This document shows, in pieces, positions 9,191-32,299 of a stretch of 64,000 bases of DNA. The notes beneath the pieces were generated by a model. That model searched no databases. It was not told the origin of the DNA and worked only from the letters and a program-made list of their open reading frames with translations. The position numbers were made by a program, and so were the translations under genes. Every line of letters starts with the position of its first letter. Position 1 is the stretch's first letter. The DNA is taken from positions 124,001 to 188,000 of the IMG/VR virus record IMGVR_UViG_3300043446_005562; one strand, 5' to 3'.

Positions 9191-9214
9191 CAATAAAAAA
9201 CAAGGATTTAAGAA

Positions 9215-11626
9215 ATGAAAGTAATAAAAAGAGATGGCCATGCAGAGACTCTGCGCCTTGACAAAATCACAAACCGAATTAAAAAACAAACCTACGGACT
9301 GGACACAGATCACGTAGATGCACTTGAAGTTGCAACAAAAGTAGTTTCCGGCCTATATGATGGAATCAGTACTGAAAAATTAGACAATTTAGCGGCTGAA
9401 ACCTCTGCTGCTCTAGCGTACATTCACCCAGACTATTCTATTCTAGCAGCCAGAATCGCAATCACGAGACTTCATAAAACAATTACAAAATCGTTCAGCG
9501 ATACGATTGAACACCTTTACAACTACATTGATCCAAAGACTGGCCAAAACGCTGGCTTAATTTCTGATGAAACCTATGCGGCAGTAAAAAAGAACTCAAG
9601 CACTTTGAATGAGGCAATAATTCACGATAGGGATCTTAATTTTGACTATTTTGGATTTAAGACTCTTGAGAGAAGTTATTTGTTAAAAACAAACGGGCAA
9701 CCTGCCGAGTCTCCGCAACACATGTACATGAGAGTTGCAGTTGGTATTTGGGGCACAGATGTTCAAAATGTTTTAAAAACATACGAGTTATTATCAACTC
9801 ATCAAATGACTCATGCAACGCCAACTCTATTCAATGCTGGCACAAAACGTCCACAACTCTCTTCGTGTTTTCTATTGACAATGCACGAAGACTCAATTGC
9901 AGGTATCTACAAAACCCTAACCGACGTTGCAGCAATCTCTCAAAATGCTGGAGGTATCGGCTTATCAATTTCAAATATTAGAGCAACCGGTTCCTATATT
10001 AAAGGCACCAACGGTACCTCAAATGGAATTGTACCAATGCTTAAAGTATTTAATGAAACTGCTCGCTATGTTGATCAAGGCGGTGGCAAACGTAAGGGAT
10101 CATTTGCAATTTATCTAGAGCCATGGCATGCAGACATTGAAGACTTTTTAGAATTAAGAAAAAATCATGGTAAAGAAGAAAGGCGTGCACGCGATCTATT
10201 CTTGGCACTATGGACTCCAGATCTTTTCATGAAACGTGTTGAAGAGGATGCTGATTGGACCCTGTTTTGTCCAGCCGAAATTGACTGTGAGCTTTGGGAA
10301 ATGTACGGCGAAGAATTTGAAAAGAATTATGTTCGCTTGGAAAAAGAGGGCAAGGGTCGGCATACGGTAAAGGCTAGAGTACTTTGGCAAAAAGTATTAG
10401 AGGCACAGGTTGAGACCGGTACGCCGTATATCCTATTCAAGGATGCAGCGAATCTTAAATCAAATCAGAAAAACCTGGGAACAATCAAGTCTTCAAACCT
10501 GTGTACTGAAATTATTGAATACACCTCAACTGATGAGCAGGCTGTCTGTAATTTAGCCTCAATTCCAGTCAATCAATTCATTGATCTTGGTAAGAGGTCA
10601 GGTAAATTAAGAAAGCACACATGTGAATATAACTTTACTGAACTCTATGAAGTTGCCTATCAGACTGCTTTAAATCTCAATAAGGTAATTGATGTAAACT
10701 ATTATCCAACAGTTGAGACCAAAAATTCAAATCTAAAGCATCGACCGATTGGAATCGGCGTTCAAGGATTGGCTGACACCTTTGCAATCATGGGTTATGA
10801 ATTCACGGGCGAAGAGGCCAAGAAATTAAACAGCGATATTTTTGAAACCATCTACTATGCAGCAATGGAGGCCTCAATTGATTTAGCTAAAAAAGAAGGC
10901 GCCTATTCATCGTATGAAGGTTCACCATTAAGTCAAGGCCAATTTCAATTTAATCTATGGGGAGTAAATGAATCTGAACTCTCAGGCCTCTGGGATTGGG
11001 CAGCACTTCGTAAAAAATTAATGAAGTGGGGCGCTAGAAATTCCCTATTACTTGCTCCAATGCCAACTGCCTCAACTGCTCAAATCATGGGCAATAACGA
11101 AGCGTTTGAGCCGTTTACCTCAAATATTGGTACCCGTCGAACCCTAGCAGGCGAATTCATTGTTGTCAACAAGCATCTAGTAAAAGATCTAGTTGAATTA
11201 GACCTATGGAATGAGTCAATGCGAAATAGAATTATTGCAGAAAAGGGATCAATTCAAAATATCCCAGAAATTCCAGTTGAGCTCAAAATGATTTACAAAA
11301 CAGTTTGGGAAATCAAACAAAAGGATCTAATTGACATGTCGGCTGATAGAGGTAAATTCATTTGCCAGTCTCAATCTCTTAATATTTTTATTAGAGACGT
11401 AAACACCGCTAAATTAACATCAGCTCACTTTCATGCATGGCGAAAAGGTTTAAAAACAGGCATGTACTATTTGAGAACTGAAGCTGCCTCTTCTGCAATT
11501 GCCTCATTGGGCTTGGATTTCAGTTCAAATAAGCCAGAAGTTAAAATTGAACCGATTATTGAAAACTTGGAAAATATAACCTGTTCCCTGGATAACCCGG
11601 AGGACTGTATTGCCTGCGGTTCATAA
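9215..11626 (+). CDS. nrdA: Ribonucleotide reductase class Ia alpha subunit with ATP cone
   Basis: [11 protein letters not shown] cone, [44 protein letters not shown]-terminal [14 protein letters not shown]. Confidence 0.97.
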
Positions 11627-20009: not shown

Positions 20010-20489
20010 ATGGCAAATACTGACAATTCTTGCGCAAACCTCGATATTAAAGACTATTGGAGAGATCGAGTTGACTCAAATCAGGACACTTTAGGTGACA
20101 TTATGACAATTCAGGCTCAAACTCAAAAAAATGCATACGGTTATAATTTCGAAGAGATGACCTTGCGTGATTTAATGAACTTTTGGCACATGAACAATCA
20201 TGCAATGATTGACGAAATTCATGAAGCGACCGACGCGCTAGGCGGAATCAAGGACGGCGACGGCAATGCTATCTGGAAACGTTGGAAAAAAGCCCACGAG
20301 AGCTTTTCTGACAAAAAGTTCTCAGATCTATCTGCTTCTGACCAATTAGAATGTAAATTCGAGATTATTGATATGCTTCATTTCTTTATGAATTATGCAA
20401 TTTCAGTTGGAATGACTGCCCAGGAAATGTATAACATGTACATGGTCAAAAATGAAGAAAATTGGGCTAGGCAACAGAGGGGCTATTAA
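20010..20489 (+). CDS. gp56: dCTP/dUTP pyrophosphatase, T4 gp56-like (all-alpha NTP-PPase)
   Basis: NSCANL, IDEIHEA, AIWKRWK, DQLECKFEIIDMLHFFMN and KNEENWARQQRGY closely parallel T4 gp56. Confidence 0.85.
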   Translation: MANTDNSCANLDIKDYWRDRVDSNQDTLGDIMTIQAQTQKNAYGYNFEEMTLRDLMNFWHMNNHAMIDEIHEATDALGGIKDGDGNAIWKRWKKAHESFSDKKFSDLSASDQLECKFEIIDMLHFFMNYAISVGMTAQEMYNMYMVKNEENWARQQRGY

Positions 20490-20506
20490 TTTAGTATATT
20501 AAACCC

Positions 20507-20863
20507 ATGATACAGGAAATTTTAACCAATAGCTTGGGTTGGCCAGGCCGAATGATATCCGGTAGTAAAAGCGGATATCGTAATACTAATCCAAAAAACT
20601 TTGCAATTTTCAATGCAAATATTTGTACTAGAGCAGGTAAAGTTTGGTTTGGCGACATTGATCTCACTTTACAAAAAGCCAAGCTACAGGAGATTGCCCA
20701 GAGCCTAAATGAAACTCTGTACGTGCTTTATGAAATGGATGCGCGTTTTGAAAATGAGAATTCTCCACTACTTGAAAAGGCTGCCGCTACTTTTCTACCA
20801 GACGGCACAGTTGAAGTAAAACCAGATTTAGTACAATATATTGATAAAAGCTTTTTTGAATGA
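20507..20863 (+). CDS. Hypothetical protein
   Basis: 118-aa ORF; ATGA overlap with the polymerase gene. Confidence 0.6.
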   Translation: MIQEILTNSLGWPGRMISGSKSGYRNTNPKNFAIFNANICTRAGKVWFGDIDLTLQKAKLQEIAQSLNETLYVLYEMDARFENENSPLLEKAAATFLPDGTVEVKPDLVQYIDKSFFE

Positions 20864-22251
20864 TAGTAAGCACAGAATTTAACGGACAAGACTCCACGCT
20901 AGTTGTTTCATATTATGATGAGACTGGTAATATTGCATTTGTAAAAAAACCAATACAGCAAGCAGATCTTTTTAACTGGGCAACCACGCCAAATCCAACT
21001 GAATTTAGAAATTGGGATAACCGATTTCTTAAAAAGGTTCCAAACAAGTGGTTGAGCCGATTTAGGCTTGAAGAATTGACGCAAAGCCGCCTTAACCAAT
21101 CTGAACTAGATTTGATCTATTCGGATCTTAGTCCAAAGAAATACTATCTAGATATTGAGATTCAATTAACTTCTCAAGAATTTCCGGATCCAGCAAAAGC
21201 CTTAATGCCGGTCAATCTAATTACATTTGTTAATGAAGATAACGTATGCTTCATCATGTCAACCATGAAAGATCTGCAGCCAACAGTAATGAAGCAAATG
21301 GAGTCCGAGGTCAATGACTATTTCAAAGCTCACAATCAAACATTTACACTTAAATATCTTTTCTTTGAGAAAGAAGAAGATTTAATGGCAACGTTTTTTC
21401 ACAAAGTTCTTCCAAAAATTCCATTCTTAACTGGCTGGAATGTAATTGGTTTTGACTGGATCTATTTGATAAATCGTTGCAAGCGTTTAAACATTGATCC
21501 AATGGAAACCATGCCGTGCAGCAAATTAATCGGTCAATCAAAAATGCCAGTGCACTTAGGTTTGCTCGATTACATGGAAGTTTTCATGAATACCAAGCCT
21601 TATAAAGTAGTTGAAAATTACAAGCTCGACTATATTGCAAATCTAGTATTGGGTACAACTAAATTACACAGCGAATACGCAACAATGATGGAAGCTCAGC
21701 AAGACATTGAGAACTTCGTCAAGTACAACGTGATTGATACAATTCTAGTCAAACTACTAGAAGACAAACTTGGTCTACTTGATGTTGCCTTTGCAATTTC
21801 AAAATTTGCGAAAGTCGACGTGTCAAAAGTATTCTCAGCAGTATTCATTACCGAAACTCTGATGTGTCGTGAATTCTTAGAGCGCGGCCGTTTTATGGCA
21901 AATGACAAGCGTGATATTGAAAGCGAAGCGACCTATGATGGCGCGTATGTTGCAAAACCTGAACCCGGATATTATAAGTACGTTTCATGTTTCGACTTTG
22001 CATCAATGTATCCAAACATTCAGATTCAATTTAACATTTCGCCAGATGCCTATATGGGTAAAAAGAAGTCAGATTCGCAACTTACCCCGGAAACTATCTT
22101 GACAAAAAATGATACAATATTTACAAAGAAGTTTGATTCGGCAGCTCGAACCATTTTAACAAGATTATACAATGGTCGTGTTGAAACCAAAGGTCAAATG
22201 AAAAAACTAGAAGAACAACTTCAAAGTGAAAAAAATACTAAAAAAGCTTAA
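20860..22251 (+). CDS. gp43: Family B DNA polymerase, N-terminal subunit (exonuclease + motif A); split gp43A-like
   Basis: YLDIE (ExoI), TGWNVIGFDW (ExoII), YKLDYIA, YNVIDT (ExoIII), YDGAYV, FDFASMYP (motif A); ends in the first fingers helix, with no KxxxNSxYG or YGDTDS. Confidence 0.88.
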   Translation: MIVSTEFNGQDSTLVVSYYDETGNIAFVKKPIQQADLFNWATTPNPTEFRNWDNRFLKKVPNKWLSRFRLEELTQSRLNQSELDLIYSDLSPKKYYLDIEIQLTSQEFPDPAKALMPVNLITFVNEDNVCFIMSTMKDLQPTVMKQMESEVNDYFKAHNQTFTLKYLFFEKEEDLMATFFHKVLPKIPFLTGWNVIGFDWIYLINRCKRLNIDPMETMPCSKLIGQSKMPVHLGLLDYMEVFMNTKPYKVVENYKLDYIANLVLGTTKLHSEYATMMEAQQDIENFVKYNVIDTILVKLLEDKLGLLDVAFAISKFAKVDVSKVFSAVFITETLMCREFLERGRFMANDKRDIESEATYDGAYVAKPEPGYYKYVSCFDFASMYPNIQIQFNISPDAYMGKKKSDSQLTPETILTKNDTIFTKKFDSAARTILTRLYNGRVETKGQMKKLEEQLQSEKNTKKA

Positions 22252-22261
22252 GAAAATTATT

Positions 22262-22897
22262 ATGGGTTACGATATAGATGCTCTTATTGCTGTCAAGGAC
22301 AGTTTTCAGGGAAACAACTTTCAATGGATAAAAACAAACGATCGTTCCAAACTTGGAAAGGTGGTTAGAGTGGTTGATGTTGCCCCAGGCAGAAATGGCT
22401 ACATTGCAAAATTATCAGACGGTTCAACCATTCCAACCGATCAATTGACCAGCAATTTAATGATGTTGATGGATGATCAGCCAGCGCTAAGCATGGAAGA
22501 GGTAATGTCAATCAATTATGTGCCTGGTCTTGACGGTGAAGTCAAAGTTGCTGAAACAATCCCAGCTGATTTTAAAGAAGAAATTTTATCGCAGCCTGGA
22601 CCCAAGGCCCAACCTGTTGCAGCTGCTCCTCAGCAAAAATCTCAAGCTGATCCGGGAGATCTATTTGGCATGTTTTCTCTTGAGGATACTGACATGACCC
22701 TAACAGTTTCAGTTAAATTACCTGCAAAGAATCTATTAAAAATGATGTATTCTAACTCGCAGGATCAGGATCAATTCTTAAATCGATTGGCCAGCTATAT
22801 AAATAATAGTGTTACGCCTGATTCAATTAAAGACTCCTTAAAAAAGTCATTGGGTCAAGATAAAAAGAAGAAAACTGATGTACCTTCAGCCCAATAA
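22262..22897 (+). CDS. Hypothetical protein
   Basis: ORF in operon, likely start MGYDID; no polymerase motifs. Confidence 0.6.
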   Translation: MGYDIDALIAVKDSFQGNNFQWIKTNDRSKLGKVVRVVDVAPGRNGYIAKLSDGSTIPTDQLTSNLMMLMDDQPALSMEEVMSINYVPGLDGEVKVAETIPADFKEEILSQPGPKAQPVAAAPQQKSQADPGDLFGMFSLEDTDMTLTVSVKLPAKNLLKMMYSNSQDQDQFLNRLASYINNSVTPDSIKDSLKKSLGQDKKKKTDVPSAQ

Positions 22898-23465
22898 GAT
22901 AAACAAGAGCACTTCTCAATTATTAAATGGAGATTTTGATCTGGTCTCATTGACTCGAGACTCACAAAAGCTTGATAAACTTACCTGCAAGCTCAATTAT
23001 ATTGCAATTTTACCGTTTGAAAGAACTGCAGACGACAGAATTAAAGCAGTGTACGGCTTAAAATTTGAAAATCATGCAACTGGGCAGACCGATACAAGTT
23101 TATTAATTGATATAGTTGATCCAACCAAGGATCAGACCCCATTTGATACAGTTTGTAGAGCTCTACTCGAAGAAGCTGGCGTAAATGTTGAAGAGCTTGG
23201 CGTTGATGAAAATGACATTTTTTATCTGGGCACAATTTCAACCACAACCCCCGTTAATTCTAAATTCAAATGTTATGCAGTTGACCTAACTAATGCTGCA
23301 AACCCGGAGTCCCCAATCGAGTTCGCAAGAACTCTTTCCAAGTCCAATTTTGACAAGGACTCCTCAGAAATAGTTAAAATTGGCTTTCATCAAGTCGTAA
23401 ATGGCGACTTCACCGACTCAACCATTCTTGCCGGCTCATTTTTATTGGTTTCATATTTTAATTGA
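22878..23465 (+). CDS. Nudix-fold protein with degenerate Nudix box
   Basis: IAILPF...TPFDTVCRALLEEAGV...FYLG; TATAAATAA late box at 22798-22806 upstream. Confidence 0.6.
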   Translation: MYLQPNKINKSTSQLLNGDFDLVSLTRDSQKLDKLTCKLNYIAILPFERTADDRIKAVYGLKFENHATGQTDTSLLIDIVDPTKDQTPFDTVCRALLEEAGVNVEELGVDENDIFYLGTISTTTPVNSKFKCYAVDLTNAANPESPIEFARTLSKSNFDKDSSEIVKIGFHQVVNGDFTDSTILAGSFLLVSYFN

Positions 23466-23491
23466 AACTAGGGTAAATCTCAGTGTAAAAG
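23465..23491 (+). promoter_or_regulatory. Early/middle promoter AAAC-N17-TAAAAG
   Basis: Upstream of uvsX; conserved spacing. Confidence 0.55.
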
Positions 23492-23516
23492 AATACTGAA
23501 ATTAAACTCTAATAAA

Positions 23517-24710
23517 ATGGCAAAAACTACAATGGACGCTTTCGCAAAGTTTAACGACTTGCTAGAGAAAAAGGTAAAATCAAAAATTGAAATTCGCGGA
23601 TTTTCGGATATTGAGGAGTACATCCCAACCGGAAACTATTTGTTAAATGCTCAAATGTCGGGCTCTCTATTTGGCGGATACCCAAACACTAGAAGCATTG
23701 GAATCGCTGGTGACTCTGGTGCTGGTAAAACATTCTTGTGCTTAAATGCGGTTCGCGAGCTGCAAAAAAAGGACTACATGGTCATTTACATTGATACCGA
23801 GGGCGCAATTGACTCAACTGACTATGTAAAATTCGGAGTTGATCTAAGCAAATTAAAGTATTTAAGAATGGGTATGATTAGCGAAGTTAAATTCTTTGTT
23901 AATGACCTTATTGAAACAATCAAGGAGAACCCTGGCCTTAAGATTGCTCTTTTTGTTGACTCAGTCGGCATGCTAGACACTGATAAGAGTAAGCGAGATA
24001 TGGAAGCTGGTAAAAATGCAGCTGATATGGGTCTTCGTGCAAAGGAGATGCGCGCACTATTCAAATCTTTGACCCTAGATCTTTCTAACTACAAGGTGCC
24101 TTTTATTTTTACTAATCACACCTATGCGTCAATGGATCAATACACGCCAAAGGGCATGTCAGGCGGAGGCGGTCCAGAATTCTCAGCTTCAATTATTTTG
24201 ATGCTAAGTAAGGGAACTTTACGTGATGAGGCTAAGACAACGACCGGCATCATTGTTAGATCTAAAACCAAAAAGAATCGTCTTGCCAAACCTATCGATA
24301 TTGAATTTCACATTTCATTTCATAAAGGTATGAATCCATTCGTTGGACTAGAGCAATACGTGAATTGGGAAAACTGTGGAGTTGGTCGCGGTAATAAATT
24401 GACCGAAAAAGAATTTTTAAAGCTTAAGTCAGATGAGTCTGAACTGTGCTCAAAATTTGAAGTAAACGGCGAAACTTTTTATTTTCTACCTAAAAAATTA
24501 GGTAAAACCTATATCATTAGACACAATGGAGACGCTGTTCCAGTTAAGGAATTCTTTTCAGCTCGACTTTTCACAAATGAGGTCTTGACTGAACTTGATG
24601 AGAAGATTATTAAACCTACTTTTAAATTCCCAGAAACACAAGACGGAATTGACAGTATGGAAACTGACGAATTAGAAGACTTAACCACAAACGAAGAGCA
24701 TGACCTTTAA
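23517..24710 (+). CDS. uvsX: RecA-like recombinase UvsX
   Basis: IPTGNYLLN, GDSGAGKT (Walker A), YIDTE, FVDSVGML, DMGLRAK, FTNHTY, MSGGGG. Confidence 0.93.
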   Translation: MAKTTMDAFAKFNDLLEKKVKSKIEIRGFSDIEEYIPTGNYLLNAQMSGSLFGGYPNTRSIGIAGDSGAGKTFLCLNAVRELQKKDYMVIYIDTEGAIDSTDYVKFGVDLSKLKYLRMGMISEVKFFVNDLIETIKENPGLKIALFVDSVGMLDTDKSKRDMEAGKNAADMGLRAKEMRALFKSLTLDLSNYKVPFIFTNHTYASMDQYTPKGMSGGGGPEFSASIILMLSKGTLRDEAKTTTGIIVRSKTKKNRLAKPIDIEFHISFHKGMNPFVGLEQYVNWENCGVGRGNKLTEKEFLKLKSDESELCSKFEVNGETFYFLPKKLGKTYIIRHNGDAVPVKEFFSARLFTNEVLTELDEKIIKPTFKFPETQDGIDSMETDELEDLTTNEEHDL

Positions 24711-25038
24711 GATACAAGATGGGTTGCCTATTAAATATTCCCTAGCCCTACACCCAGCTCTACCAGGTTATCCAAGCCAGTCTGATTTCATGTTTGATGT
24801 AGCCTCACATATTGTTAGGGTTACTGAATTAAAGTCAAAGGACTGGGCCTCAAACGATATCAAGTTTTCAACAAAAACTCTTAAGTATGTTTTTGGAGAA
24901 CACATGAAATCTGAAACTTTCAAGGAAAAGATCAAGACCATCCTGAAAGACCTACTTGAATCCGGTAAACTAGTAAAAAAAGGCGAATTTATTTTTATAC
25001 CCGAATCCGAATTTTCTAAGTACTATATAATAGCGTAA
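24700..25038 (+). CDS. Hypothetical protein, possible winged-helix
   Basis: C-terminal ILKDLLESGKLVKKGEFIFI resembles a recognition helix plus wing. Confidence 0.5.
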   Translation: MTFKIQDGLPIKYSLALHPALPGYPSQSDFMFDVASHIVRVTELKSKDWASNDIKFSTKTLKYVFGEHMKSETFKEKIKTILKDLLESGKLVKKGEFIFIPESEFSKYYIIA

Positions 25039-25059
25039 ATACACGCTCACCCAAAAACT

Positions 25060-26601
25060 ATGATGATTGATTTTAAAGAAAATATCGAACTCTTAGAGAA
25101 GATAATTTTCAATTTTATTTTGACAGAGGAAGATAATGAAGTCGTAATTAAACCCAAGAATTACGATTCGTTGGACATGAGAGAAATCATCCCAATGGTA
25201 AAGCCTCACTATTTTAATGATGATAATTTACAGAGACTTTATCGTGAAGCTAAAAAATTCTTTCTAGAATACAAGAAAATTCCAACTCGAAATGAATTGA
25301 AACAGCTTGCAAATCTTGCAAATATGGATATCCCGGATGCAAAATTTAATAGCTATTTTGAAGTTGATTTGGGCAGCTATAATTACGATTTCTTATTTAA
25401 GTACACAAAGGCTTTCATCTTTTACAAGAATCTAAATGAGTCCGTAATTGACGTTTTATCGTTTATTAAGACAACCGACGTCAATCCTGAAAACGTTGAG
25501 ATTATAACAAATCAAGTAAGAGAAAAATTTAATGAGAAGCTCAATGTCTCTTTTACAAGCGCAGAGTCTGGTCTAAACTTCTTTAATTCAATAGATCATA
25601 TTCAGTTGAGTAAAATCGGAAATCCAAGTGGCTTTAAATTCTTTGACAAGACTCTAGGCGGAGGTTGGAACCCCAAAACCCTGGTCGTTTTTCAGGGCAG
25701 ACCAAAGGTTGGTAAATCGATGGTGCTCTCGAATATTGCAGGCCGAGCCTTTATTTCGGGCTGTAATGTTGGTATTGCAACTCTTGAGTTATCCGATCGT
25801 AAATACATGAAGCGATTAGGCTCAATGATTCTAGATATTCCATTCAAGGATTACGATTCAATGCTTGAGCCGGGTCATGTTTCTACAGTTGAGGCAAGAA
25901 TGAAGACCTTAAAAGAAACTGTTACAACGCTTGGTGAATTACAAGTAAAGGAATTTCCAACCGGAACAGCAACGGCAATCGATATTGAAAACTATTTCTT
26001 AAAGGTTCAGCAGAACACTGGTAAAAAATTCACAGTAATTGTTGTGGACTACATCAATCTGATGAGACCTATGCGAGAACAGGGCAATACTTATGAAAAG
26101 ATCAAGGTAATTTCTGAGGAGCTTAGGGCCGTTGCAATTCGAAACGAATGGTGCATTATCACAGCAACTCAAATCAAAAGGGACGCGGTTGACGATCAAG
26201 ATCTTAGTATGTCAGACATTGCCGAATCATTTGGTTTAGTTCATACAGTAGATTCTCTATTCGGTCTTATGCGAGGTCCAATGGAGAAGAGAATGAAGAT
26301 TAAACTGATTGCGAATCGAGATGGAGGCTATAATGAAAGTTTCAAAATGTTTCGTATGAGTTATGAATTCGCAAAATTAATTGAGGAAACCGACCCAGCA
26401 TCAGAATTCTATTCAGACGATGATGACACGCAATCATTAGAAAATCAAATGCGTAATCAATATCAAACCGCCGCAACAACTACATTACCTCCAAATTTAA
26501 TTCCGTATGACGTTGCAATTAGCCCAGACTATCCAGTAAAAGAGGCAATTGCGCCAAAACCTTCAACGAATTACGATGACATATTAAACATGATTCAATA
26601 A
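25060..26601 (+). CDS. gp41: Replicative DnaB-like helicase, T4 gp41-like
   Basis: GRPKVGKS, ATLELS, VKEFPTG, IVVDYINLM, ISEELRAVA, TATQIKR, IAESFG. Confidence 0.92.
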   Translation: MMIDFKENIELLEKIIFNFILTEEDNEVVIKPKNYDSLDMREIIPMVKPHYFNDDNLQRLYREAKKFFLEYKKIPTRNELKQLANLANMDIPDAKFNSYFEVDLGSYNYDFLFKYTKAFIFYKNLNESVIDVLSFIKTTDVNPENVEIITNQVREKFNEKLNVSFTSAESGLNFFNSIDHIQLSKIGNPSGFKFFDKTLGGGWNPKTLVVFQGRPKVGKSMVLSNIAGRAFISGCNVGIATLELSDRKYMKRLGSMILDIPFKDYDSMLEPGHVSTVEARMKTLKETVTTLGELQVKEFPTGTATAIDIENYFLKVQQNTGKKFTVIVVDYINLMRPMREQGNTYEKIKVISEELRAVAIRNEWCIITATQIKRDAVDDQDLSMSDIAESFGLVHTVDSLFGLMRGPMEKRMKIKLIANRDGGYNESFKMFRMSYEFAKLIEETDPASEFYSDDDDTQSLENQMRNQYQTAATTTLPPNLIPYDVAISPDYPVKEAIAPKPSTNYDDILNMIQ

Positions 26602-26616
26602 AAAAACCAGCATATT

Positions 26617-27261
26617 TTGAAAAAGAAGAAAAATGAAGAGCTGTTTGAGGATCTAGGATTCGAAGAACAGGATAATTTAGTAGATGATGATTCGGATTTT
26701 GAGCTGTACGACGTTGATGAAGAAGAAGATCCAGCTGAGTTAGAAAGACGTAGAGTTGAATACGCAAAACTTCGTAAGAACGATAAGATATTCAATAACT
26801 CATACAACATGGGTCAAAATCTCTCAGAAGACGAAGAGGATCTCCGGTCAAGTTCTGAAATTAAGTTGGACGTAAGTTCTCCAGACTATCATCTATACGA
26901 TCGAGATCAATACTCAGATCACATGGACAACAAGATAACACAGTACGATATTGATCAATATGTCATGGAATCCAGTGAAATACAGGGAATCTTGGGTGAC
27001 CAGCCGGACAAACGTAAATTCAGCAAAGCTGAGATAAATCAAATATTCATATTGATTTTAAACGGCGTAAGCCGTGGCCAAACCGCTAGCGTGTTCGTAA
27101 GCCCAATTCACGTGTTGGATGCAATTTCTTCCTTAACAACGATGGAATACAAGAAACTTTTTGACATGTTAACGTATGAACATAAAGAGCTACTGCTGCT
27201 GGAACTAAATAAAAAATATGGATTTTTGGACAAGCCTTCTAAAAATCTAAAAATGTTTTAA
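26617..27261 (+). CDS. Hypothetical acidic protein
   Basis: 214-aa ORF (TTG start) between the helicase and gp47. Confidence 0.6.
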   Translation: MKKKKNEELFEDLGFEEQDNLVDDDSDFELYDVDEEEDPAELERRRVEYAKLRKNDKIFNNSYNMGQNLSEDEEDLRSSSEIKLDVSSPDYHLYDRDQYSDHMDNKITQYDIDQYVMESSEIQGILGDQPDKRKFSKAEINQIFILILNGVSRGQTASVFVSPIHVLDAISSLTTMEYKKLFDMLTYEHKELLLLELNKKYGFLDKPSKNLKMF

Positions 27262-27263
27262 TA

Positions 27264-28379
27264 ATGAAATTAGCTAACATTAGAAAAATAAATCTGGTTG
27301 GAGATTTACATCTTGGTATTAGAAATAACTCAGTTGAGTGGTTAGAGATTCAAAAGGACTTTTTAACAGACTTTTTATTTCAAACAATCGATCAGGACTT
27401 TGATGAAGATCGGGACATTTTAATTCTAGAAGGCGATATTTTTCATTCTAGAGAATCAATCAATGTCAGAATTCAGAACGAAGCTTTTGATATTTTTAAA
27501 AAGCTTGCTGCTAAATTTAAACGTGGAGTCTATATCATAATTGGCAACCATGACGTCTACTATAAGGATAAGAATGAAGTTCACTCGCTAAAATCATTAA
27601 GTTACCTATCGGATAATATTCATGTATTTGAAACGCCTGAGGTCTTGACAATAAATGAATCTCATAATTTTTTGATGTTGCCATGGATTGAAGACGTGTC
27701 TAGGCTATCTAATGTAGTAAATGATTACCGTAATATTTGTCAGTATATTGTCTGCCATGCCGATATCAAGGGTTTAAAATTTAACAAGTGGACTCATGTT
27801 GAACATGGTATTGAGATTGATGCGCTTGACTCCTATAAAAGAGTTTGGGGCGGACACATTCACCATCGTCAAGAAAGTCGTAATGTTCTCTATACCGGTA
27901 CTCCATATCAAATGGATCGTGGCGATATGGGCAATGTCAAAGGCTTTTATCAGTTAAGAGTAGACACGCCAGTCTTGACTGAAGAGTTTATAGAAAATAC
28001 TCAGTCTCCAAGCTTTGTTAAATTTGATATTATGAATGTCTTGGAAATGCCATTAGCCGAAATTCAAGAAAAATTCAATAATAATTTTGTTGATCTAATG
28101 ATTAACGTTAATTTTGCAAACAGATTTTCGGTTACCAGATTTCTAGAAGAGATTTCAGATATCCCACACCGCAAAATAGAATTCTTTACCTATGTTGATC
28201 AGACTCAAGCTGAGGCTGAAATGAACTCTGAGTTCAATCCGGAAGAAGGTTTCAATATTACTGATATTTTCAAAATGTACGTCAAGTCTAGAGACTATTC
28301 TCAAGAATTCAAATCGGATTTGGCTCGTAAATTTGTGGAAATCCATCAACTAGTAAAACAAGATAATTCGTATGCCTAA
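27264..28379 (+). CDS. gp47: Recombination nuclease subunit (gp47/Mre11/SbcD)
   Basis: GDLHLG, GDIFH, GNHD and GHIH metallophosphoesterase motifs; YTGTPYQ. Confidence 0.93.
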   Translation: MKLANIRKINLVGDLHLGIRNNSVEWLEIQKDFLTDFLFQTIDQDFDEDRDILILEGDIFHSRESINVRIQNEAFDIFKKLAAKFKRGVYIIIGNHDVYYKDKNEVHSLKSLSYLSDNIHVFETPEVLTINESHNFLMLPWIEDVSRLSNVVNDYRNICQYIVCHADIKGLKFNKWTHVEHGIEIDALDSYKRVWGGHIHHRQESRNVLYTGTPYQMDRGDMGNVKGFYQLRVDTPVLTEEFIENTQSPSFVKFDIMNVLEMPLAEIQEKFNNNFVDLMINVNFANRFSVTRFLEEISDIPHRKIEFFTYVDQTQAEAEMNSEFNPEEGFNITDIFKMYVKSRDYSQEFKSDLARKFVEIHQLVKQDNSYA

Positions 28380-28863
28380 TCAGCCATTTATTAGTAGGAA
28401 CGTTACCATTGTTGAACGTGGTCGATCTCATGTAGCCATTGCGGCTAATGATATTTTAGAAAACACGGTGATTGAAATTTCGCCAGTTGTGATGCTAACT
28501 GCAAAAACCGCAATTTCAATAATCAATAACACTCAAGATTTTGAGAACCGCCTAATTATGGATGAGGCTGCAGTTGATCGAGAATATGAAATCTTTGCAA
28601 GCCTTGGTGAAATGGAACTTGAAAGAAGATTAAACAGCGGTCAAATAAGTCCAGACGAATATCAAAAAATTCTTAGGTCTAAAATAAATCTCAATGCGCT
28701 CATTAATGCAAAAACTCACGCAATGCCTCTTGGTTACGGGCTATTATATGGGATCAGCGATTTCCCAAATTTGGTTAGAGAATATGATTCTGCTCATAAA
28801 CTTTGTTATTATCGAACAGTACAATACATAACAGCAGGCACGGACTTAACCTATTCTAAATAA
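28372..28863 (+). CDS. SET-domain-like protein (degenerate catalytic motifs)
   Basis: AANDILENTVIEISPV ... PLGYGLLYGISDFPN ... YITAGTDLTY follows the bacterial SET pattern (A..DI..G..IE..PV / LGYGSLYNHS..PN / I..GEELT.Y), but NHS is replaced by GIS. Confidence 0.6.
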   Translation: MPNQPFISRNVTIVERGRSHVAIAANDILENTVIEISPVVMLTAKTAISIINNTQDFENRLIMDEAAVDREYEIFASLGEMELERRLNSGQISPDEYQKILRSKINLNALINAKTHAMPLGYGLLYGISDFPNLVREYDSAHKLCYYRTVQYITAGTDLTYSK

Positions 28864-28869
28864 TAGCGA

Positions 28870-30540
28870 ATGAAGATAACTCAATTCTCCTTTAAGAACA
28901 TTTGTTCATACGGCAATAAATTACAAACTTTTAAATTCTCAGACGATCCTCAGCTTGTTCTAGTTCAGGGTAAAAACGGCAGTGGAAAATCTTCTATCTC
29001 TGATGCCCTAACTGTCGCGCTATACGGAAAATCTTCAATCCGAAAAACCAAAGAGATTCCAAATCGAATCAATAAAAATGCCTATACTCATGTTGAATTT
29101 TTGACAGGTTCAGGTGAGGTTATTGAAATTGAAAGAGGTCTTGAGCCGAATTTTTCCAAGCTCTTGATTAATGGATCCGAGCACAATCTTCCCGATAAAA
29201 GAAGAGTCGATGATTTTATTGAAGAAGAATTGACAAAGATTCCATTCAATGTATTTTCAAATACAATTAGCCTGTCGGTAAATGATTTTAAGAGTTTTGT
29301 AAAATTAAGCCCCCATGACAAGCGCCAGATTATTGATAAAATATTTGGACTAGATATCGTAAATGACATGTCCAGAATAAGTAAAGAAGAGGTTCGAGAA
29401 TTAAAGATCTCAATTCAGTCCCTTGACTCAACTATTTTAAATAATGAGGCCATTTTGGAAAATTCCAAAGACCAGCTAAATAACCTAAAGCAGGATCTGT
29501 CTTCAGCTAAAGAGACTAGAATTTCCGAACTTACTCAAGAGATTTCTGAGCTAAGTAGGGTCAAAGAGTCTCATAAAGCCGAGTATACTGGATTCTCATC
29601 TCAACTTCAAGACTTAGAAAAAGCGGTTAATGAAGCAAAGGAGACGCGTACCACAATTCAATTCAATATCTCAGAGATTCAAAAGAAATTAGATCTCTAT
29701 TCCAAGAACAAGTGTCCACACTGTCTATCTGATTTGACCGATGCGGCTCACTTGAATATCAAAGAGAAACTTTCAAATAAAAAAGAGGAGCAAGCCAGCT
29801 TATTACCTGAGACTGCCGTAAAGATTCAGGATGCAATCCATATTTTGGATAAGGCAAAGGCCGCACAGAGCGCAGCTAGAGACAAATATTTTCAAATAGA
29901 CGGGCTCTTAGCTCCACTAAAAAAGGAATTATCTGACCTGTCAACAACGGACGTTACCACCCAACAGTCGGGAACAGAATACATAAACGGGGTAATTGAA
30001 TCAATAGAGAATGAAATTTCAGACCTAAATTCAAAGCGTGCAAAATTAATGAGTCAGCTCTCAATTTCACAAGAAATGGAAGATATTTTATCTGACAACG
30101 GTATGAAACGTTTGTTAATGAGCCAAATCATTCCAATGTTGAATAAAAAGATCTTAAAGACTTCAAAGCTATTGGAATTCAAATTCGCATTCGAATTTGA
30201 TCTTGAATTCAATCCAATCATTACTCATTTGGGCATGCAGATTTCACCAGATTCACTTTCAGCCGGAGAGCAGAAAAAAATGAATTTGATTGTTTTGCTC
30301 TGTATTCTAGAGCTTTTAAAATTAAAACATCACAAGGTCAATTTATTGTTTCTGGATGAAGTATTTTCATCACTAGACGTTGAATCCATCTATAGAGTGG
30401 TGGATTTATTGAAAACTTTTGCTAAAAAGTACAATATGACGGTCTTTGTAATTTCACACGATCCTCTACCTGAAGAGTTTTTCGATACAAAATTGATGGT
30501 TGAGAACACTGATCACTTCTCCGACATTAAGATTCTGTAA
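28870..30540 (+). CDS. gp46: Recombination ATPase subunit (gp46/Rad50/SbcC)
   Basis: GKNGSGKS, coiled coil with CPHC zinc hook, LSAGE signature, LFLDE, VISH. Confidence 0.94.
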   Translation: MKITQFSFKNICSYGNKLQTFKFSDDPQLVLVQGKNGSGKSSISDALTVALYGKSSIRKTKEIPNRINKNAYTHVEFLTGSGEVIEIERGLEPNFSKLLINGSEHNLPDKRRVDDFIEEELTKIPFNVFSNTISLSVNDFKSFVKLSPHDKRQIIDKIFGLDIVNDMSRISKEEVRELKISIQSLDSTILNNEAILENSKDQLNNLKQDLSSAKETRISELTQEISELSRVKESHKAEYTGFSSQLQDLEKAVNEAKETRTTIQFNISEIQKKLDLYSKNKCPHCLSDLTDAAHLNIKEKLSNKKEEQASLLPETAVKIQDAIHILDKAKAAQSAARDKYFQIDGLLAPLKKELSDLSTTDVTTQQSGTEYINGVIESIENEISDLNSKRAKLMSQLSISQEMEDILSDNGMKRLLMSQIIPMLNKKILKTSKLLEFKFAFEFDLEFNPIITHLGMQISPDSLSAGEQKKMNLIVLLCILELLKLKHHKVNLLFLDEVFSSLDVESIYRVVDLLKTFAKKYNMTVFVISHDPLPEEFFDTKLMVENTDHFSDIKIL

Positions 30541-30565
30541 ACTATTTTCATTTTTTTAGTATATT
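30539..30565 (+). promoter_or_regulatory. Early/middle promoter AAAC-N17-TATATT
   Basis: Immediately upstream of the ATG at 30572 (near-leaderless mRNA). Confidence 0.6.
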
Positions 30566-30571
30566 TTATTT

Positions 30572-31453
30572 ATGATAGTATTTAAAGGCCAGACTTTTGC
30601 AGACTGTTATCGTGATTCATTGATTCACTTATTCAATGAAGGCGCTGAAAACAATGCAAGAGGAACTGTTAGTAAAGAATTATTGGATGTTGCGCTAGTC
30701 GTTGAAGATCCAACTCAGTGCCTGTATCAAAACGACAAGCGAGGCTCTCAAATCAAATACATTGCTGCCGAATTTTTATGGTATTACTCGGGCCGAAATG
30801 ATGTAAAATTCATCTCTAACTGGGCTAAGTTTTGGGAGACTATTCAAAATGAAGACGGTACTGCTAATTCAGCATACGGCAATCTAATTTTTAGGGTTAA
30901 AAATCAGCATAATGTTTCCCAATATCAGTGGGCAATGCAGAGCCTTATTTCAGATGCCAACACTCGACAAGCTGTGATGCATTTCAATATGCCAACTCAT
31001 CAATATTCTGGCAATAAGGATTTTGTTTGTACAATGTATGCAAATTGTCACATTCGAAACAATAAATTCTATATGTCAGTTTACATGAGAAGCAACGATG
31101 CCGTTTGGGGTACACCAACCGACGTTGCCTTTTTCTGTTCTTTACAAATGCAGATGTTTGCTCAATTAAAGAGCTTTTATCCGGACTTGGAATTGGGTAG
31201 CTATACTCACGTTGCAAATTCATATCATGTCTACGATCGTCATTATGAATTGGGTCAAGCCATGTTGCAATCAGAATTCAAAGCTGACTCGCTACCGTCA
31301 ATCGTTGCTGATCTAGTTGATGTTGATGGAACTCCAAGCAGAAATTTACTCATCTTAATGGATGCATTAGAAGCAGATGACGAGCCGTATTTGATTTTCC
31401 AAGACGGTGACGATCTATTGAAATGGATTCATAAAAACATTACAAAGAAATGA
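30572..31453 (+). CDS. Thymidylate synthase-family enzyme, probable dCMP hydroxymethylase/methylase (T4 gp42-like)
   Basis: NSAYG, TRQA, DFVCT (catalytic Cys), MRSNDAVWGTPTD with Asp at the dCMP/dUMP specificity position, SYHVYDRH. Confidence 0.8.
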   Translation: MIVFKGQTFADCYRDSLIHLFNEGAENNARGTVSKELLDVALVVEDPTQCLYQNDKRGSQIKYIAAEFLWYYSGRNDVKFISNWAKFWETIQNEDGTANSAYGNLIFRVKNQHNVSQYQWAMQSLISDANTRQAVMHFNMPTHQYSGNKDFVCTMYANCHIRNNKFYMSVYMRSNDAVWGTPTDVAFFCSLQMQMFAQLKSFYPDLELGSYTHVANSYHVYDRHYELGQAMLQSEFKADSLPSIVADLVDVDGTPSRNLLILMDALEADDEPYLIFQDGDDLLKWIHKNITKK

Positions 31454-31908
31454 TAACGTCTAAACAGCATAAAATTGACGTTGCGTATATCAAAATGGCT
31501 CAAGTTTGGGCAGAACTCTCTCATGCAACTCGTAAAAAAGTTGGCGCTCTAATTGTAAAAAACAACACAATCATTTCAGATGGATTTAATGGAACCCCCT
31601 CGGGTTTTGAAAATGAATGTGAAGAGGCTGTGTGTAATGACGATGGCTCATTTAGGGAATACAAAACAAAATGGTATGTTTTGCATGCCGAGTCAAATGC
31701 CTTAGCTAAGGTTGCTAAATCAACTCAAAGTAGCGAGGGCGCAACTCTCTATATTACCTATTCACCATGTACGGATTGCAGTAAATTAATTTTACAGGCC
31801 GGTATCAAACGCGTTGTCTATCTAGAAGAATACCGCGATACCAATGGATTAGACTTTTTAAGAAGAGCTGGTGTAGAGATCAAAAAAATCAGCCTAGATA
31901 ATGATTGA
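31450..31908 (+). CDS. cd: dCMP deaminase
   Basis: KVGALIV, GFNGTPSG, HAESNA, SPCTDC zinc motifs. Confidence 0.95.
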   Translation: MITSKQHKIDVAYIKMAQVWAELSHATRKKVGALIVKNNTIISDGFNGTPSGFENECEEAVCNDDGSFREYKTKWYVLHAESNALAKVAKSTQSSEGATLYITYSPCTDCSKLILQAGIKRVVYLEEYRDTNGLDFLRRAGVEIKKISLDND

Positions 31909-32299
31909 TAGCAATCGAACTCTTGAGATAGTTTTTGTAAAAGACCAAAAGCAATTTGTCCATGTACTTCAAAAGAAGTGCAAATCTGACTATTTACTCA
32001 ATGTCAACAAAATCATTCGTGAGAAATTTGAGCAGGACATTTTGGTGCCCAATAAGATCCAATCTTTTTTAATAAACTATGAAATTAAGAAATTGATTGA
32101 CAAGGCAGTTAACGTCAGAAACCGAAAATACAATAGAATAATTTACGTTAATTCAAGTCTTTCCGCGAATACTGTTCTAAATACAATAGATTTTCTATCG
32201 AGCGCATACGACGGAGTTAAATTTAGTCCATTAATAATTGATTTAGAAGAGGAATTTTGTAAGGGCCTAAAGATTAAGACAATAAAAAAGGGGCGTTAA
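31901..32299 (+). CDS. Hypothetical protein
   Basis: 132-aa ORF ending at the terminator. Confidence 0.55.
   Translation: MIDSNRTLEIVFVKDQKQFVHVLQKKCKSDYLLNVNKIIREKFEQDILVPNKIQSFLINYEIKKLIDKAVNVRNRKYNRIIYVNSSLSANTVLNTIDFLSSAYDGVKFSPLIIDLEEEFCKGLKIKTIKKGR

What the first reader, a model, noticed from the sequence alone, without database searches (positions are those of the whole stretch)
20010..31908. Probable modified-cytosine pathway: dCMP-type TS homolog, gp56-like dCTPase, dCMP deaminase (plus dNMP kinase at 63 kb)
Seen in sequence: the TS-family protein reads MRSNDAVWGTPTD. It has Asp where dUMP-specific ThyA has Asn (Asn177 in E. coli) and T4 dCMP hydroxymethylase has Asp (MRSNDVVFGFRND). 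NSAYG and DFVCT also follow gp42. A close gp56-like pyrophosphatase is present. By eye, palindromic sites (GAATTC, AAGCTT, GGATCC, GATC) are plentiful, as expected for protected DNA; I did not count them. Inference: C is replaced by 5hmC, 5mC or another 5-substituted C. An equally interesting alternative is that the overlapping TS-homolog/deaminase pair makes dTMP via 5-methyl-dCMP.
Basis: partly seen in the sequence, partly recalled or inferred. Interest (0 to 1): 0.65.

Follow-up and report, generated by a model that had tools for sequence, protein, structure and literature searches.

The report
Phage pathway for hydroxymethylcytosine DNA
An uncultured 253-kb freshwater T4-like phage carries the enzymes that phage T4 uses to replace cytosine in its DNA with 5-hydroxymethylcytosine; this is a well-known anti-restriction strategy found here in a new phage lineage, and no chemical proof exists yet.

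Summary
The core observation holds. The thymidylate-synthase (TS) homolog at 30572-31453 has every residue published as diagnostic for T4 dCMP hydroxymethylase: E67, S100, Y102, D150, C153, D176 and D184. All are invariant or nearly so in 120 metagenomic homologs. It lacks the Asn that marks 5-hydroxy-dCMP synthases, the Asn/Ala pattern seen in the one 5mC-phage enzyme examined (PaMx74), and MilA's ribose determinants.

A true gp56 homolog (20010-20489) and a dCMP deaminase (31450-31908) are present. The "dNMP kinase" at 63040-63648 is not a gp1 homolog, but its model matches thymidylate kinases. It is conserved with the TS homolog and deaminase in two distant relatives.

A canonical ThyA lies elsewhere in the 252.6-kb genome, so dTMP synthesis via 5-methyl-dCMP is not needed here. 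The gp56 homolog, ThyA and the glycosyltransferase genes are lineage-specific; one relative carries a MazG-type pyrophosphatase instead.

The named palindromes occur at expectation. 6-mer palindromes overall are slightly depleted, and CATATG is absent.

Most likely the phage makes 5hm-dCTP and 5hmC-containing DNA, possibly decorated further. This is a new member of a known kind, and metavirome work has already described the TS(Asp177)-deaminase-pyrophosphatase signature. Virion DNA chemistry is untested.

The parts
30572..31453 (+). TS-superfamily enzyme, predicted dCMP 5-hydroxymethylase (gp42-like)
   Evidence: PF00303 at 75.9 bits. Best PDB matches are MilA (2e-20) and T4 gp42 (2.5e-15), ahead of ThyA (5e-11). 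29% identity to T4 gp42. Signature residues E67, S100, Y102, R132, D150, C153, T154, R173, S174, D176, D184, H219 and Y221 all match gp42 and are invariant or nearly so (119-120 of 120) in 120 homologs.
31450..31908 (+). dCMP deaminase, 4-bp overlap with the TS homolog
   Evidence: PF00383 at 80 bits and phrog_174 at 1e-51. PDB 4p9c (S-TIM5 dCMP deaminase) 5e-40 and T4 cd 7e-24. It lies directly downstream of the TS homolog in all 22 related IMG/VR loci that have downstream flank.
20010..20489 (+). gp56-like dCTP/dUTP pyrophosphatase (all-alpha NTP-PPase)
   Evidence: 30% identity to T4 gp56 (E 2e-26). 36-40% identity over 87-99% of its length to gp56-type genes of other T4-like phages. phrog_173 at 7e-17. 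Present in the nearest relative G001 but absent from G002, G003, G004 and LR756500.
63040..63648 (-). Thymidylate-kinase-like P-loop kinase, candidate 5hm-dCMP kinase
   Evidence: No similarity to T4 gp1. AF2 pLDDT 88.6; top Foldseek hits are yeast, vaccinia and M. tuberculosis thymidylate kinases and dNKs. Atlas look-alikes partly carry Thymidylate_kin. 54% identical homologs in G003 and G004, which also keep the TS homolog and deaminase.
31901..32299 (+). Conserved 132-aa ORF overlapping the deaminase end by 8 bp; role unknown
   Evidence: Present after the deaminase in all related loci. No Pfam, PHROG or Atlas hit. The AF2 model (pLDDT 78) resembles the kinase domain of T4 polynucleotide kinase (VIA Z 9.5), but the sequence has no Walker A loop.
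8231..11626 (+). Class I ribonucleotide reductase, NrdB (8231-9190) and NrdA (9215-11626): dNDP supply
   Evidence: Ribonuc_red_sm at 376 bits; Ribonuc_red_lgC at 689 bits plus an ATP-cone domain.
40471..45118 (+). Variable glycosyltransferase cassette (RgpF-like, WbsX, GT2_4/GT92, PhyH-like dioxygenase); possible 5hmC decoration, unproven
   Evidence: Pfam hits. At the same syntenic position G004 and G003 carry different GT/acyltransferase cassettes. No homologs of these four genes in G003 or G004.

Best explanation
The phage runs a T4-type pre-replicative cytosine-replacement pathway.

Proposed steps:
1. Phage NrdAB, probably together with host DNA breakdown, supplies deoxycytidine nucleotides.
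2. The gp56-like pyrophosphatase converts dCTP/dCDP to dCMP. This removes the normal precursor and feeds the next step.
3. The TS homolog uses methylene-tetrahydrofolate to convert dCMP to 5-hydroxymethyl-dCMP. Cys153 attacks C6, Asp184 reads the cytosine, and Asp150/Ser100/Tyr102 hold the water that hydrates the exocyclic methylene.
4. The thymidylate-kinase-like P-loop kinase, and perhaps a guanylate-kinase-like protein elsewhere in the genome, phosphorylates the product. Host NDP kinase then yields 5hm-dCTP for the phage polymerase.
5. The adjacent dCMP deaminase diverts part of the dCMP to dUMP for the phage's canonical ThyA.

Virion DNA would therefore carry 5hmC in place of C, possibly further decorated.

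Shown: gene identities, the active-site signature, synteny and its conservation. Inferred: every enzymatic activity, the choice of kinase, and the DNA composition.
For: TS homolog signature:
- My alignments with T4 gp42, RB69 gp48, SPO1 gp29, PaMx11, PaMx74 and the phage's own ThyA give the query Asp/Cys/Thr/Asp/Asp at E. coli positions 143/146/147/169/177, plus Ser100 and Tyr102. This is identical to gp42.
- These residues are the published hydroxymethylase signature (PMC6400193; PMC13326640).
- They are invariant or nearly so in 120 homologs.
- Deoxyribose determinants Ser174/Arg132 are present, not MilA's Ala/Lys.
- A tree groups the family with the Asp177 enzymes.

Other pathway genes:
- gp56 homolog.
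- dCMP deaminase.
- Thymidylate-kinase-like fold, conserved with the TS homolog and deaminase in distant relatives.
- Canonical ThyA and no ThyX in the genome.
- NrdAB.

Published associations:
- A deaminase lies within 3 kb of a TS gene in 70% of experimentally C-modified contigs, against 6% of unmodified ones.
- Asp177 marks modified contigs.

Supporting context:
- Relative G004 lacks gp56 but has a MazG-type NTP pyrophosphatase.
- CATATG is absent from this genome and from G001 and depleted in G003/G004. NdeI (CATATG) is one of the few enzymes reported to cut heavily C-modified phage DNA.
- 100%-identical contigs over both genes occur in three riverine RNA libraries.
Against: - There is no chemical or enzymatic data.
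- The gp56 homolog, ThyA and the guanylate-kinase-like gene were not found in relatives G003/G004. Those records are 67-83% complete, and only the first 153 kb of G003 was compared. The full T4-like set is therefore not a conserved unit.
- No gp1 homolog and no T4-type glucosyltransferase was found.
- 6-mer palindromes are slightly depleted, including those containing C/G, so the genome is not free of restriction pressure.
- CATATG avoidance is host-lineage specific (G002 has 43 sites) and would also arise in unmodified DNA.
- Some deaminases that sit next to TS genes act on 5mC/5hmC nucleotides.
Confidence: 0.7

Rival explanations
1. The TS homolog and the overlapping deaminase work as a pair. 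5-substituted dCMP is deaminated to dTMP (via 5-methyl-dCMP) or to 5hm-dUMP, so the target base is thymine or a thymine derivative rather than cytosine.
For: TS-deaminase adjacency is conserved in all 22 loci with downstream flank. The preprint 10.1101/2024.12.05.627091 found TS-linked deaminases that act on 5mC/5hmC nucleotides and proposed dTMP synthesis from 5mdCMP. ThyA was not found in relatives G003/G004.
Against: This genome has a canonical ThyA. The TS homolog carries the hydroxymethylase residues Asp150/Ser100, not the Asn/Ala seen in the TS of the 5mC phage PaMx74. The deaminase is closest to the canonical S-TIM5 dCMP deaminase. Only 7 of 90 such deaminases acted on 5hmdC in vivo in the preprint.
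Confidence: 0.1
2. The enzyme is a dCMP methyltransferase and the DNA carries 5-methylcytosine, as in Xp12 and PaMx74.
For: Asp at position 177 alone also fits 5mdCMP synthases. The pyrophosphatase-TS-deaminase triad also occurs in the 5mC Pamexvirus phages.
Against: The PaMx74 enzyme has Asn at position 143, Pro at 147 and Ala at the Ser94 position. The query has Asp, Thr and Ser, like gp42. T4 D145N makes no 5hm-dCMP, which shows this Asp is specific to hydroxymethylation.
Confidence: 0.06
3. The enzyme is a flavin-dependent 5-hydroxy-dCMP synthase (RB69 gp48 type), and the DNA carries glycosylated 5-hydroxycytosine.
For: It is an Asp177 enzyme, the genome is rich in glycosyltransferases and sugar-nucleotide genes, and NdeI-site avoidance fits.
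Against: All tested 5hodCMP synthases have Asn at E. coli position 169. RB69 gp48 shows this in my alignment, while the query and all 120 homologs keep Asp176. PDB chains 9iqu/9iqc, annotated only as thymidylate synthase and not identified further, score far lower (26 bits) than gp42 (60 bits).
Confidence: 0.03
4. The genes serve only nucleotide-pool management (dUTP/dCTP sanitation, dTMP supply), and virion DNA is canonical or only partly substituted.
For: dCMP deaminase and gp56-type dUTPases also occur in phages without known modification. gp56 was not found in the other relatives searched (G002-G004, LR756500). Palindromes are mildly depleted.
Against: A second, dCMP-specific TS-family enzyme with an intact active site, conserved in 674 homologs, has no known role other than making modified dCMP. 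A canonical ThyA already covers dTMP.
Confidence: 0.1

Closest known systems
Phage T4 hydroxymethylcytosine pathway (gp42 dCMP hydroxymethylase, gp56 dCTPase, gp1 dNMP kinase, cd, td)
   Same: A gp42-type active site identical at all signature residues, a true gp56 homolog, dCMP deaminase, canonical ThyA and NrdAB, all in a T4-like replication module.
   Different: Only 29-30% identity to gp42 and gp56. No gp1 homolog; a thymidylate-kinase-like kinase takes its place. No T4 alpha/beta-glucosyltransferase family was found (inconclusive). No frd (DHFR) family appeared in the Pfam batch scans, the third of which listed only 25 of 48 families. The TS homolog and deaminase are adjacent here but far apart in T4.
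TS(Asp177)-dCMP deaminase-NTP pyrophosphatase clusters of C-modified environmental phages (MetaGPA: eLife 2021 PMC8670742; bioRxiv 10.1101/2024.12.05.627091); example Xanthomonas phage Xp15
   Same: The same TS-then-deaminase adjacency and the same signature Asp/Cys/Thr/Asp/Asp.
   Different: No carbamoyltransferase family appeared in the Pfam scans (Xp15 has one). The pyrophosphatase is gp56-type and lies 10 kb away rather than being a PRA-PH/MazG gene next door. The genome is a 253-kb T4-like phage related to Lak phages.
RB69 gp48 / DLP3 gp80 5-hydroxy-dCMP synthases (NAR 2026, PMC13326640)
   Same: TS-superfamily enzyme with Asp177 and an acidic residue at position 143; a nucleotide kinase and glycosyltransferases are encoded in the genome.
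   Different: The query keeps Asp at E. coli position 169, where all validated 5hodCMP synthases have Asn.
MilA CMP hydroxymethylase (Streptomyces, mildiomycin pathway)
   Same: Best PDB sequence match (76 bits); same Asp143/Asp177-type hydroxymethylase active site.
   Different: MilA's ribose determinants Ala176/Lys133' are Ser174/Arg132 in the query, the deoxyribose type. The context here is a phage replication module.

Membership tests
T4-type dCMP hydroxymethylase (TS superfamily) | Thymidylate-synthase fold/domain | tested here: met
   PF00303 at 75.9 bits against a cut-off of 24.3; PDB hits to MilA, gp42 and ThyA.
T4-type dCMP hydroxymethylase (TS superfamily) | Catalytic Cys (T4 C148) and general catalytic set (E60, Y96, R168, S169, D171, H216, Y218) | tested here: met
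   C153, E67, Y102, R173, S174, D176, H219 and Y221 align with gp42. All are invariant in the 120 homologs except C153, which is present in 119 of 120.
T4-type dCMP hydroxymethylase (TS superfamily) | Asp at T4 179 / E. coli 177 (cytosine rather than uracil) | tested here: met
   D184 is present in 120 of 120 homologs. The dUMP enzymes SPO1 gp29, PaMx11 and the phage's own ThyA have Asn.
T4-type dCMP hydroxymethylase (TS superfamily) | Asp/Glu three residues before the Cys, plus Ser94 (hydroxymethyl rather than methyl) | tested here: met
   D150 and S100. Criterion from PMC6400193. The TS of 5mC phage PaMx74 has Asn and Ala at these positions.
T4-type dCMP hydroxymethylase (TS superfamily) | Makes 5hm-dCMP from dCMP and methylene-THF | not testable with these tools
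   Needs an enzyme assay, or in vivo expression with LC-MS.
5-hydroxy-dCMP synthase (RB69 gp48 type) | Asn at E. coli position 169 (D169N) | tested here: not met
   The query and all 120 homologs have Asp176. RB69 gp48 shows Asn in the same alignment. Criterion.
dCMP methyltransferase (Xp12/PaMx74 type) | Asp177 with a non-acidic residue at 143 and no Ser94 | tested here: not met
   PaMx74 has Asn143, Pro147 and Ala; the query has Asp150, Thr154 and Ser100. Only one 5mC-phage sequence was compared.
Canonical ThyA (dUMP to dTMP) | Leu143, His147, Asn177 | tested here: not met
   The query has Asp, Thr and Asp. The genome's other TS gene (G000 28184-29389) has Leu, His and Asn and scores 279 bits.
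T4 gp56 dCTPase/dUTPase | Full-length sequence homology to gp56 | tested here: met
   30% identity over 168 columns to T4 gp56, E 2e-26, with a shared C-terminal KN..N..RQ..GY motif. 36-40% identity to gp56-type genes of other T4-like phages.
T4 gp56 dCTPase/dUTPase | Hydrolyses dCTP/dCDP to dCMP | not testable with these tools
   Needs an enzyme assay. The same family also acts on dUTP.
dCMP deaminase (zinc, CDA fold) | PF00383 domain with HAE and PCxxC zinc motifs | tested here: met
   PF00383 at 80 bits. The HAE and PCTDC motifs are visible in the alignment to 4p9c.
T4 gp1 dNMP kinase | Sequence homology to gp1 | tested here: not met
   No hit in the genome at E <= 10. Pairwise BLASTP against ORF 63040-63648 gives E 1.7.
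Thymidylate kinase / dNK-type nucleotide kinase | P-loop NMP-kinase fold with Walker A | tested here: met
   A GPRHSGKT loop is present. AF2 pLDDT 88.6. Foldseek gives 3tmk at 1.7e-6 (TM 0.62), followed by further thymidylate kinases and dNKs. Substrate not testable.
T4 beta-glucosyltransferase | PF09198 domain | tested here: inconclusive
   No hit in G000-G004, but the control genomes also gave none.

The most novel reading that the evidence does not exclude
5hmC made by this pathway may be further decorated with unusual sugars or acyl-sugars.

- A glycosyltransferase cassette sits at a fixed locus between the head and baseplate genes. Its content differs in each lineage: RgpF/WbsX/GT2/dioxygenase here, GT1-GT2/KAS III/SDR in G004, and GT2/rhamnosyltransferase/ACP in G003.
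- Phage-encoded sugar-nucleotide genes (dehydratase, DegT aminotransferase, PglD-like acetyltransferase) could feed it.
- This would be a diversifying DNA glycan code in freshwater relatives of Lak megaphages.
- Purging of NdeI/EcoRV/AseI-type sites would then mark the residual weak points of the modification.
Probability: 0.2. Interest if true: 0.65.

Novelty: new member of a known kind. Interest (0 to 1): 0.4.

Why it matters
It extends the T4-type hydroxymethylcytosine pathway to an uncultured and widespread clade of freshwater jumbo phages. Their nearest named kin are the Prevotella Lak megaphages, and their hosts are probably Bacteroidota.

Modified DNA in these phages would affect several things: how well they are recovered and quantified in metagenomes, which host defences they escape or trigger, and whether their enzymes (hydroxymethylase, thymidylate-kinase-like kinase, deaminase, glycosyltransferases) are useful for epigenetic-sequencing tools.

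The comparison also shows which parts of the pathway are core (TS homolog, deaminase, kinase) and which are interchangeable accessories (gp56 versus MazG, ThyA, glycosyltransferases).

Tried and rejected
- Megablast of the region against GenBank phages found no match.
- A search for T4 gp1 in the genome found nothing at E <= 10, so the 'gp1-like' label was dropped.
- ThyX (PF02511) is absent.
- MazG and PRA-PH families are absent from this genome and G001; only G004 has one.
- The T4 beta-glucosyltransferase family gave no hit, but the control was also silent, so this is inconclusive.
- phmmer and an HMM of gp56 against six-frame ORFs of G004, the first 153 kb of G003 and a 25-kb stretch of LR756500 gave only noise.
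- Pfam and PHROGs found nothing for ORFs 20507-20863, 22226-22897, 22878-23465, 24700-25038, 28372-28863 and 31901-32299.
- The Atlas search gave no usable hit for ORF 31901-32299.
- Batch Pfam scans of 147 ORFs outside the window report families but not the member that carries them, and the third listed only 25 of 48 families. Absences of DHFR or carbamoyltransferase there are therefore soft.
- The tree has very long branches for the reference enzymes. Only the Asp177/Asn177 split (support 83/99) is used.
- Laid runs were Logan contigs only. They show presence in RNA libraries but cannot prove transcription and say nothing about base modification.
- Palindrome abundance was rejected as evidence for protection, because the class is in fact slightly depleted.

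Full report
**Setting**

The window is bases 124001-188000 of a 252,618-bp IMG/VR virus record, estimated 93% complete. It is a T4-like myovirus.

- Window genes include tail sheath, gp23-like capsid, UvsX, gp41-, gp46- and gp47-like genes, gp32 and NrdAB.
- UvsX and the capsid protein are closest to an uncultured 462-kb phage (LR756500, 35-37% identity) and to the Prevotella Lak megaphages (31-38%).
- No cultured phage is close, and megablast finds nothing.
- Near-identical DNA occurs in freshwater, reservoir, estuary, wastewater and river samples from 11 studies.
- A T9SS sorting domain elsewhere in the genome suggests a Bacteroidota host.

**The observation**

ORF 30572-31453 (293 aa) is a thymidylate-synthase-family protein (PF00303, 75.9 bits).

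- Its best solved relatives are the hydroxymethylases MilA (2e-20) and T4 gp42 (2.5e-15). Thymidylate synthases come after them (5e-11 and weaker).
- ORF 20010-20489 aligns end to end with T4 gp56 (30% identity, E 2e-26). It aligns with hundreds of gp56-type genes of other T4-like phages at 36-40% identity.
- ORF 31450-31908 is a dCMP deaminase, most like the cyanophage S-TIM5 enzyme (140 bits) and T4 cd (88 bits). It overlaps the TS homolog by 4 bp.

**What the TS homolog makes**

Three papers give residue-level rules.

- Asn177 to Asp (E. coli numbering) switches the substrate from dUMP to dCMP and marks experimentally C-modified contigs (PMC8670742).
- An acidic residue three positions before the catalytic Cys, together with Ser94 and Tyr96 (T4 numbering), is required for hydroxymethylation. 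T4 D145N is inactive (PMC6400193).
- Asp169 to Asn marks the recently discovered flavin-dependent 5-hydroxy-dCMP synthases (PMC13326640).

I fetched reference genes from GenBank records and aligned them (alignments). Residues at E. coli positions 143/146/147/169/177:

| Enzyme | Residues |
|---|---|
| Phage's own canonical ThyA | Leu/Cys/His/Asp/Asn |
| SPO1 gp29, PaMx11 (dUMP hydroxymethylases) | Asp/Cys/Asn/Asp/Asn |
| RB69 gp48 (5-hydroxy-dCMP synthase) | Glu/Cys/Thr/Asn/Asp |
| PaMx74 (5mC phage) | Asn/Cys/Pro/Asp/Asp, with Ala at the Ser94 position |
| T4 gp42 | Asp/Cys/Thr/Asp/Asp, with Ser94 |
| Query | Asp/Cys/Thr/Asp/Asp, with Ser100 |

- All 14 checked catalytic positions equal those of gp42. 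Eleven are invariant in the 120 best metagenomic homologs, and the other three hold in 119 of 120.
- MilA's ribose-preference residues (Ala176, Lys133') are Ser174 and Arg132 here, which is the deoxyribose type.
- A maximum-likelihood tree separates Asp177 enzymes, including the query family, from Asn177 enzymes (support 83/99). Its branches are long.
- The same signature occurs in phage TS genes that sit next to a beta-glucosyltransferase (Lactobacillus phage ATCCB, Enterococcus phage vipetofem). It also occurs next to a carbamoyltransferase plus dCMP deaminase (Xanthomonas phage Xp15).

I conclude that the enzyme is a dCMP 5-hydroxymethylase by every sequence criterion available. Its activity is inferred.

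**The rest of the pathway**

- The genome encodes a second, canonical ThyA (genome 28184-29389, 279 bits) and no ThyX. dTMP therefore does not need the TS-homolog/deaminase pair.
- NrdA and NrdB lie in the window.
- The '63-kb dNMP kinase' (63040-63648) is not related to T4 gp1 and hits no family.
  - It has a Walker A loop and a confident AF2 model (pLDDT 88.6).
  - Its best structural matches are thymidylate kinases and deoxynucleoside kinases. Its Atlas look-alikes are viral clusters that partly carry Thymidylate_kin.
- A guanylate-kinase-like ORF (genome 39608-40090) is a second kinase candidate.

**Comparative genomics**

- The TS homolog has 674 relatives in metagenomes, many on contigs of 100-295 kb.
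- In 24 IMG/VR loci the order polymerase B N-part, UvsX, gp41, gp47, gp46, TS, deaminase, ORF132 is fixed. All 22 loci with downstream flank have the deaminase directly after the TS homolog.
- I compared all 279 ORFs of this genome with two more distant relatives: G004 (214 kb) and the first 153 kb of G003.
  - Conserved: the TS homolog (64-67% identity), the deaminase (67-69%) and the thymidylate-kinase-like kinase (54%).
  - Not found: the gp56 homolog, ThyA, the guanylate-kinase-like gene and the glycosyltransferase genes.
- The gp56 homolog is present only here and in the nearest relative G001 (85% identity).
- G004 instead has a 145-aa MazG-type NTP pyrophosphatase. I read this as non-orthologous replacement of the dCTPase role; this is inference.
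- The core module of the clade is therefore hydroxymethylase + deaminase + kinase. This matches the association found experimentally in C-modified environmental phage contigs: a deaminase within 3 kb of a TS gene in 70% of modified contigs against 6% of unmodified ones.

**Palindromes**

- With a maximal-order Markov expectation, 4-mer palindromes are not depleted (median O/E 1.03).
- 6-mer palindromes as a class are slightly depleted: 0.91 against 0.995 for non-palindromes, p = 1.7e-4. Those containing C/G are depleted as much as AT-only ones. Site abundance is therefore not evidence for protection.
- One site stands out. CATATG is absent from all 252.6 kb, against 16 expected by the Markov model and about 80 by base composition.
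  - It is also absent from G001 and depleted in G003 (2) and G004 (6), but not in G002 (43).
  - G004 also avoids GATATC (5 against 42.5 expected) and ATTAAT (22 against 47.7).
  - NdeI (CATATG) and AseI (ATTAAT) are among the few enzymes reported to cut heavily C-modified phage DNA.
- The pattern fits a modified genome that must still purge sites its modification cannot shield. It would also arise in unmodified DNA facing such host enzymes, so it is weak support only.

**Possible further decoration**

- The window holds a four-gene cassette at 40471-45118: an RgpF-like protein, a WbsX glycosyltransferase (334 bits), a GT2_4/GT92 protein and a PhyH-like dioxygenase.
- At the same syntenic position G004 and G003 carry different cassettes.
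  - G004: a GT1/GT2 fusion, a hexapeptide transferase, KAS III and an SDR.
  - G003: two GT2 proteins, a rhamnosyltransferase, a hexapeptide transferase and an ACP.
- Elsewhere the genome has GT1/GT4, GT9 and GT2 proteins, a sugar dehydratase/epimerase, a DegT aminotransferase and a PglD-like acetyltransferase.
- These could decorate 5hmC, but they could equally glycosylate virion proteins or host glycans. The cassette lies between the head and baseplate genes. This remains open.

**Expression**

Contigs 100% identical to parts of the TS homolog and the deaminase occur in three riverine metatranscriptome runs. DNA carry-over cannot be excluded.

**Verdict**

It can be sharpened to a T4-type 5-hydroxymethyl-dCMP pathway. 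The dTMP-via-5mdCMP alternative is a published mechanism but is unlikely here. This kind of system is well known, and the TS(Asp177)-deaminase-pyrophosphatase signature has already been mined from IMG/VR. The finding is therefore a new member of a known kind, in a lineage where DNA modification has, to my knowledge, not been reported.

Noticed in passing
whole genome G000 (window included); relatives G001, G003, G004, G002: CATATG (NdeI site) is completely absent from the 252.6-kb genome (16 expected by Markov model, about 80 by composition). It is also absent from G001 and depleted in G003 and G004, but frequent in G002 (43 in 95 kb). G004 also avoids GATATC and ATTAAT.
   Followed up: yes
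whole genome G000 and G004: The non-palindromic hexamer GGAACC/GGTTCC is the most under-represented 6-mer here (130 observed against 239 expected). It is also depleted in G004 (146 against 205). Cause unknown.
   Followed up: no
window 20860-22251 (+): The family-B DNA polymerase is split. This ORF carries only the exonuclease domain and the start of the polymerase domain (463 aa). A separate DNA_pol_B hit lies among the ORFs of genome 122.5-221.5 kb outside the window (scan batch A3), probably at 188-221 kb. Split gene 43 is known in some T4-like phages.
   Followed up: partly
window 40471-45118 (+); L057:644-6140; L067:10642-14846: A glycosyltransferase/acyl-sugar cassette sits at a fixed position between a DnaJ-like gene and a conserved 275-aa gene. 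Its gene content is completely different in each of three related genomes.
   Followed up: partly
window 31901-32299 (+): A conserved 132-aa ORF is coupled to the deaminase by an 8-bp overlap. Its model has a P-loop-kinase-like fold (T4 Pnk kinase domain, Z 9.5) but no Walker A loop, so it may be a pseudo-kinase or a nucleotide-binding partner.
   Followed up: partly
G004:C1:144245-144679 (-): Relative G004 lacks the gp56 homolog but carries a MazG-type NTP pyrophosphatase, apparently a non-orthologous replacement.
   Followed up: partly
window 647-2227 (+): A phage-encoded GroEL-type chaperonin (Cpn60_TCP1, 222 bits).
   Followed up: no
window 59476-62430 (-): A 984-aa protein has an N-terminal RNA-ligase domain and a long unassigned remainder. 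At least two further RNA ligases and a Pnk-like AAA_33 kinase occur elsewhere in the genome.
   Followed up: no
genome outside the window (batches of ORFs at 1-41 kb and 188-252 kb): Unusual cargo by Pfam: non-specific endonuclease (Endonuclease_NS), UvdE, Fpg glycosylase, tyrosinase, histone-deacetylase domain, the Thoeris inhibitor Tad6, ClpB-like AAA+ protein, and a T9SS Por_Secre_tail domain (a hint to a Bacteroidota host). The members carrying these families were not located individually.
   Followed up: no
L023 (LR756500.1 139612-164478): The 462-kb uncultured phage has a TS homolog of the same signature (46% identity), but no deaminase or gp56 homolog within 12 kb on either side and no gp56 homolog in the whole record.
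   Followed up: partly
L025:2414-3076 (Agathobaculum phage AB434P2): A gene annotated as deoxyuridylate hydroxymethyltransferase has Asp at the Asn177 position and the full dCMP-hydroxymethylase signature, so the annotation is probably wrong about the substrate.
   Followed up: partly
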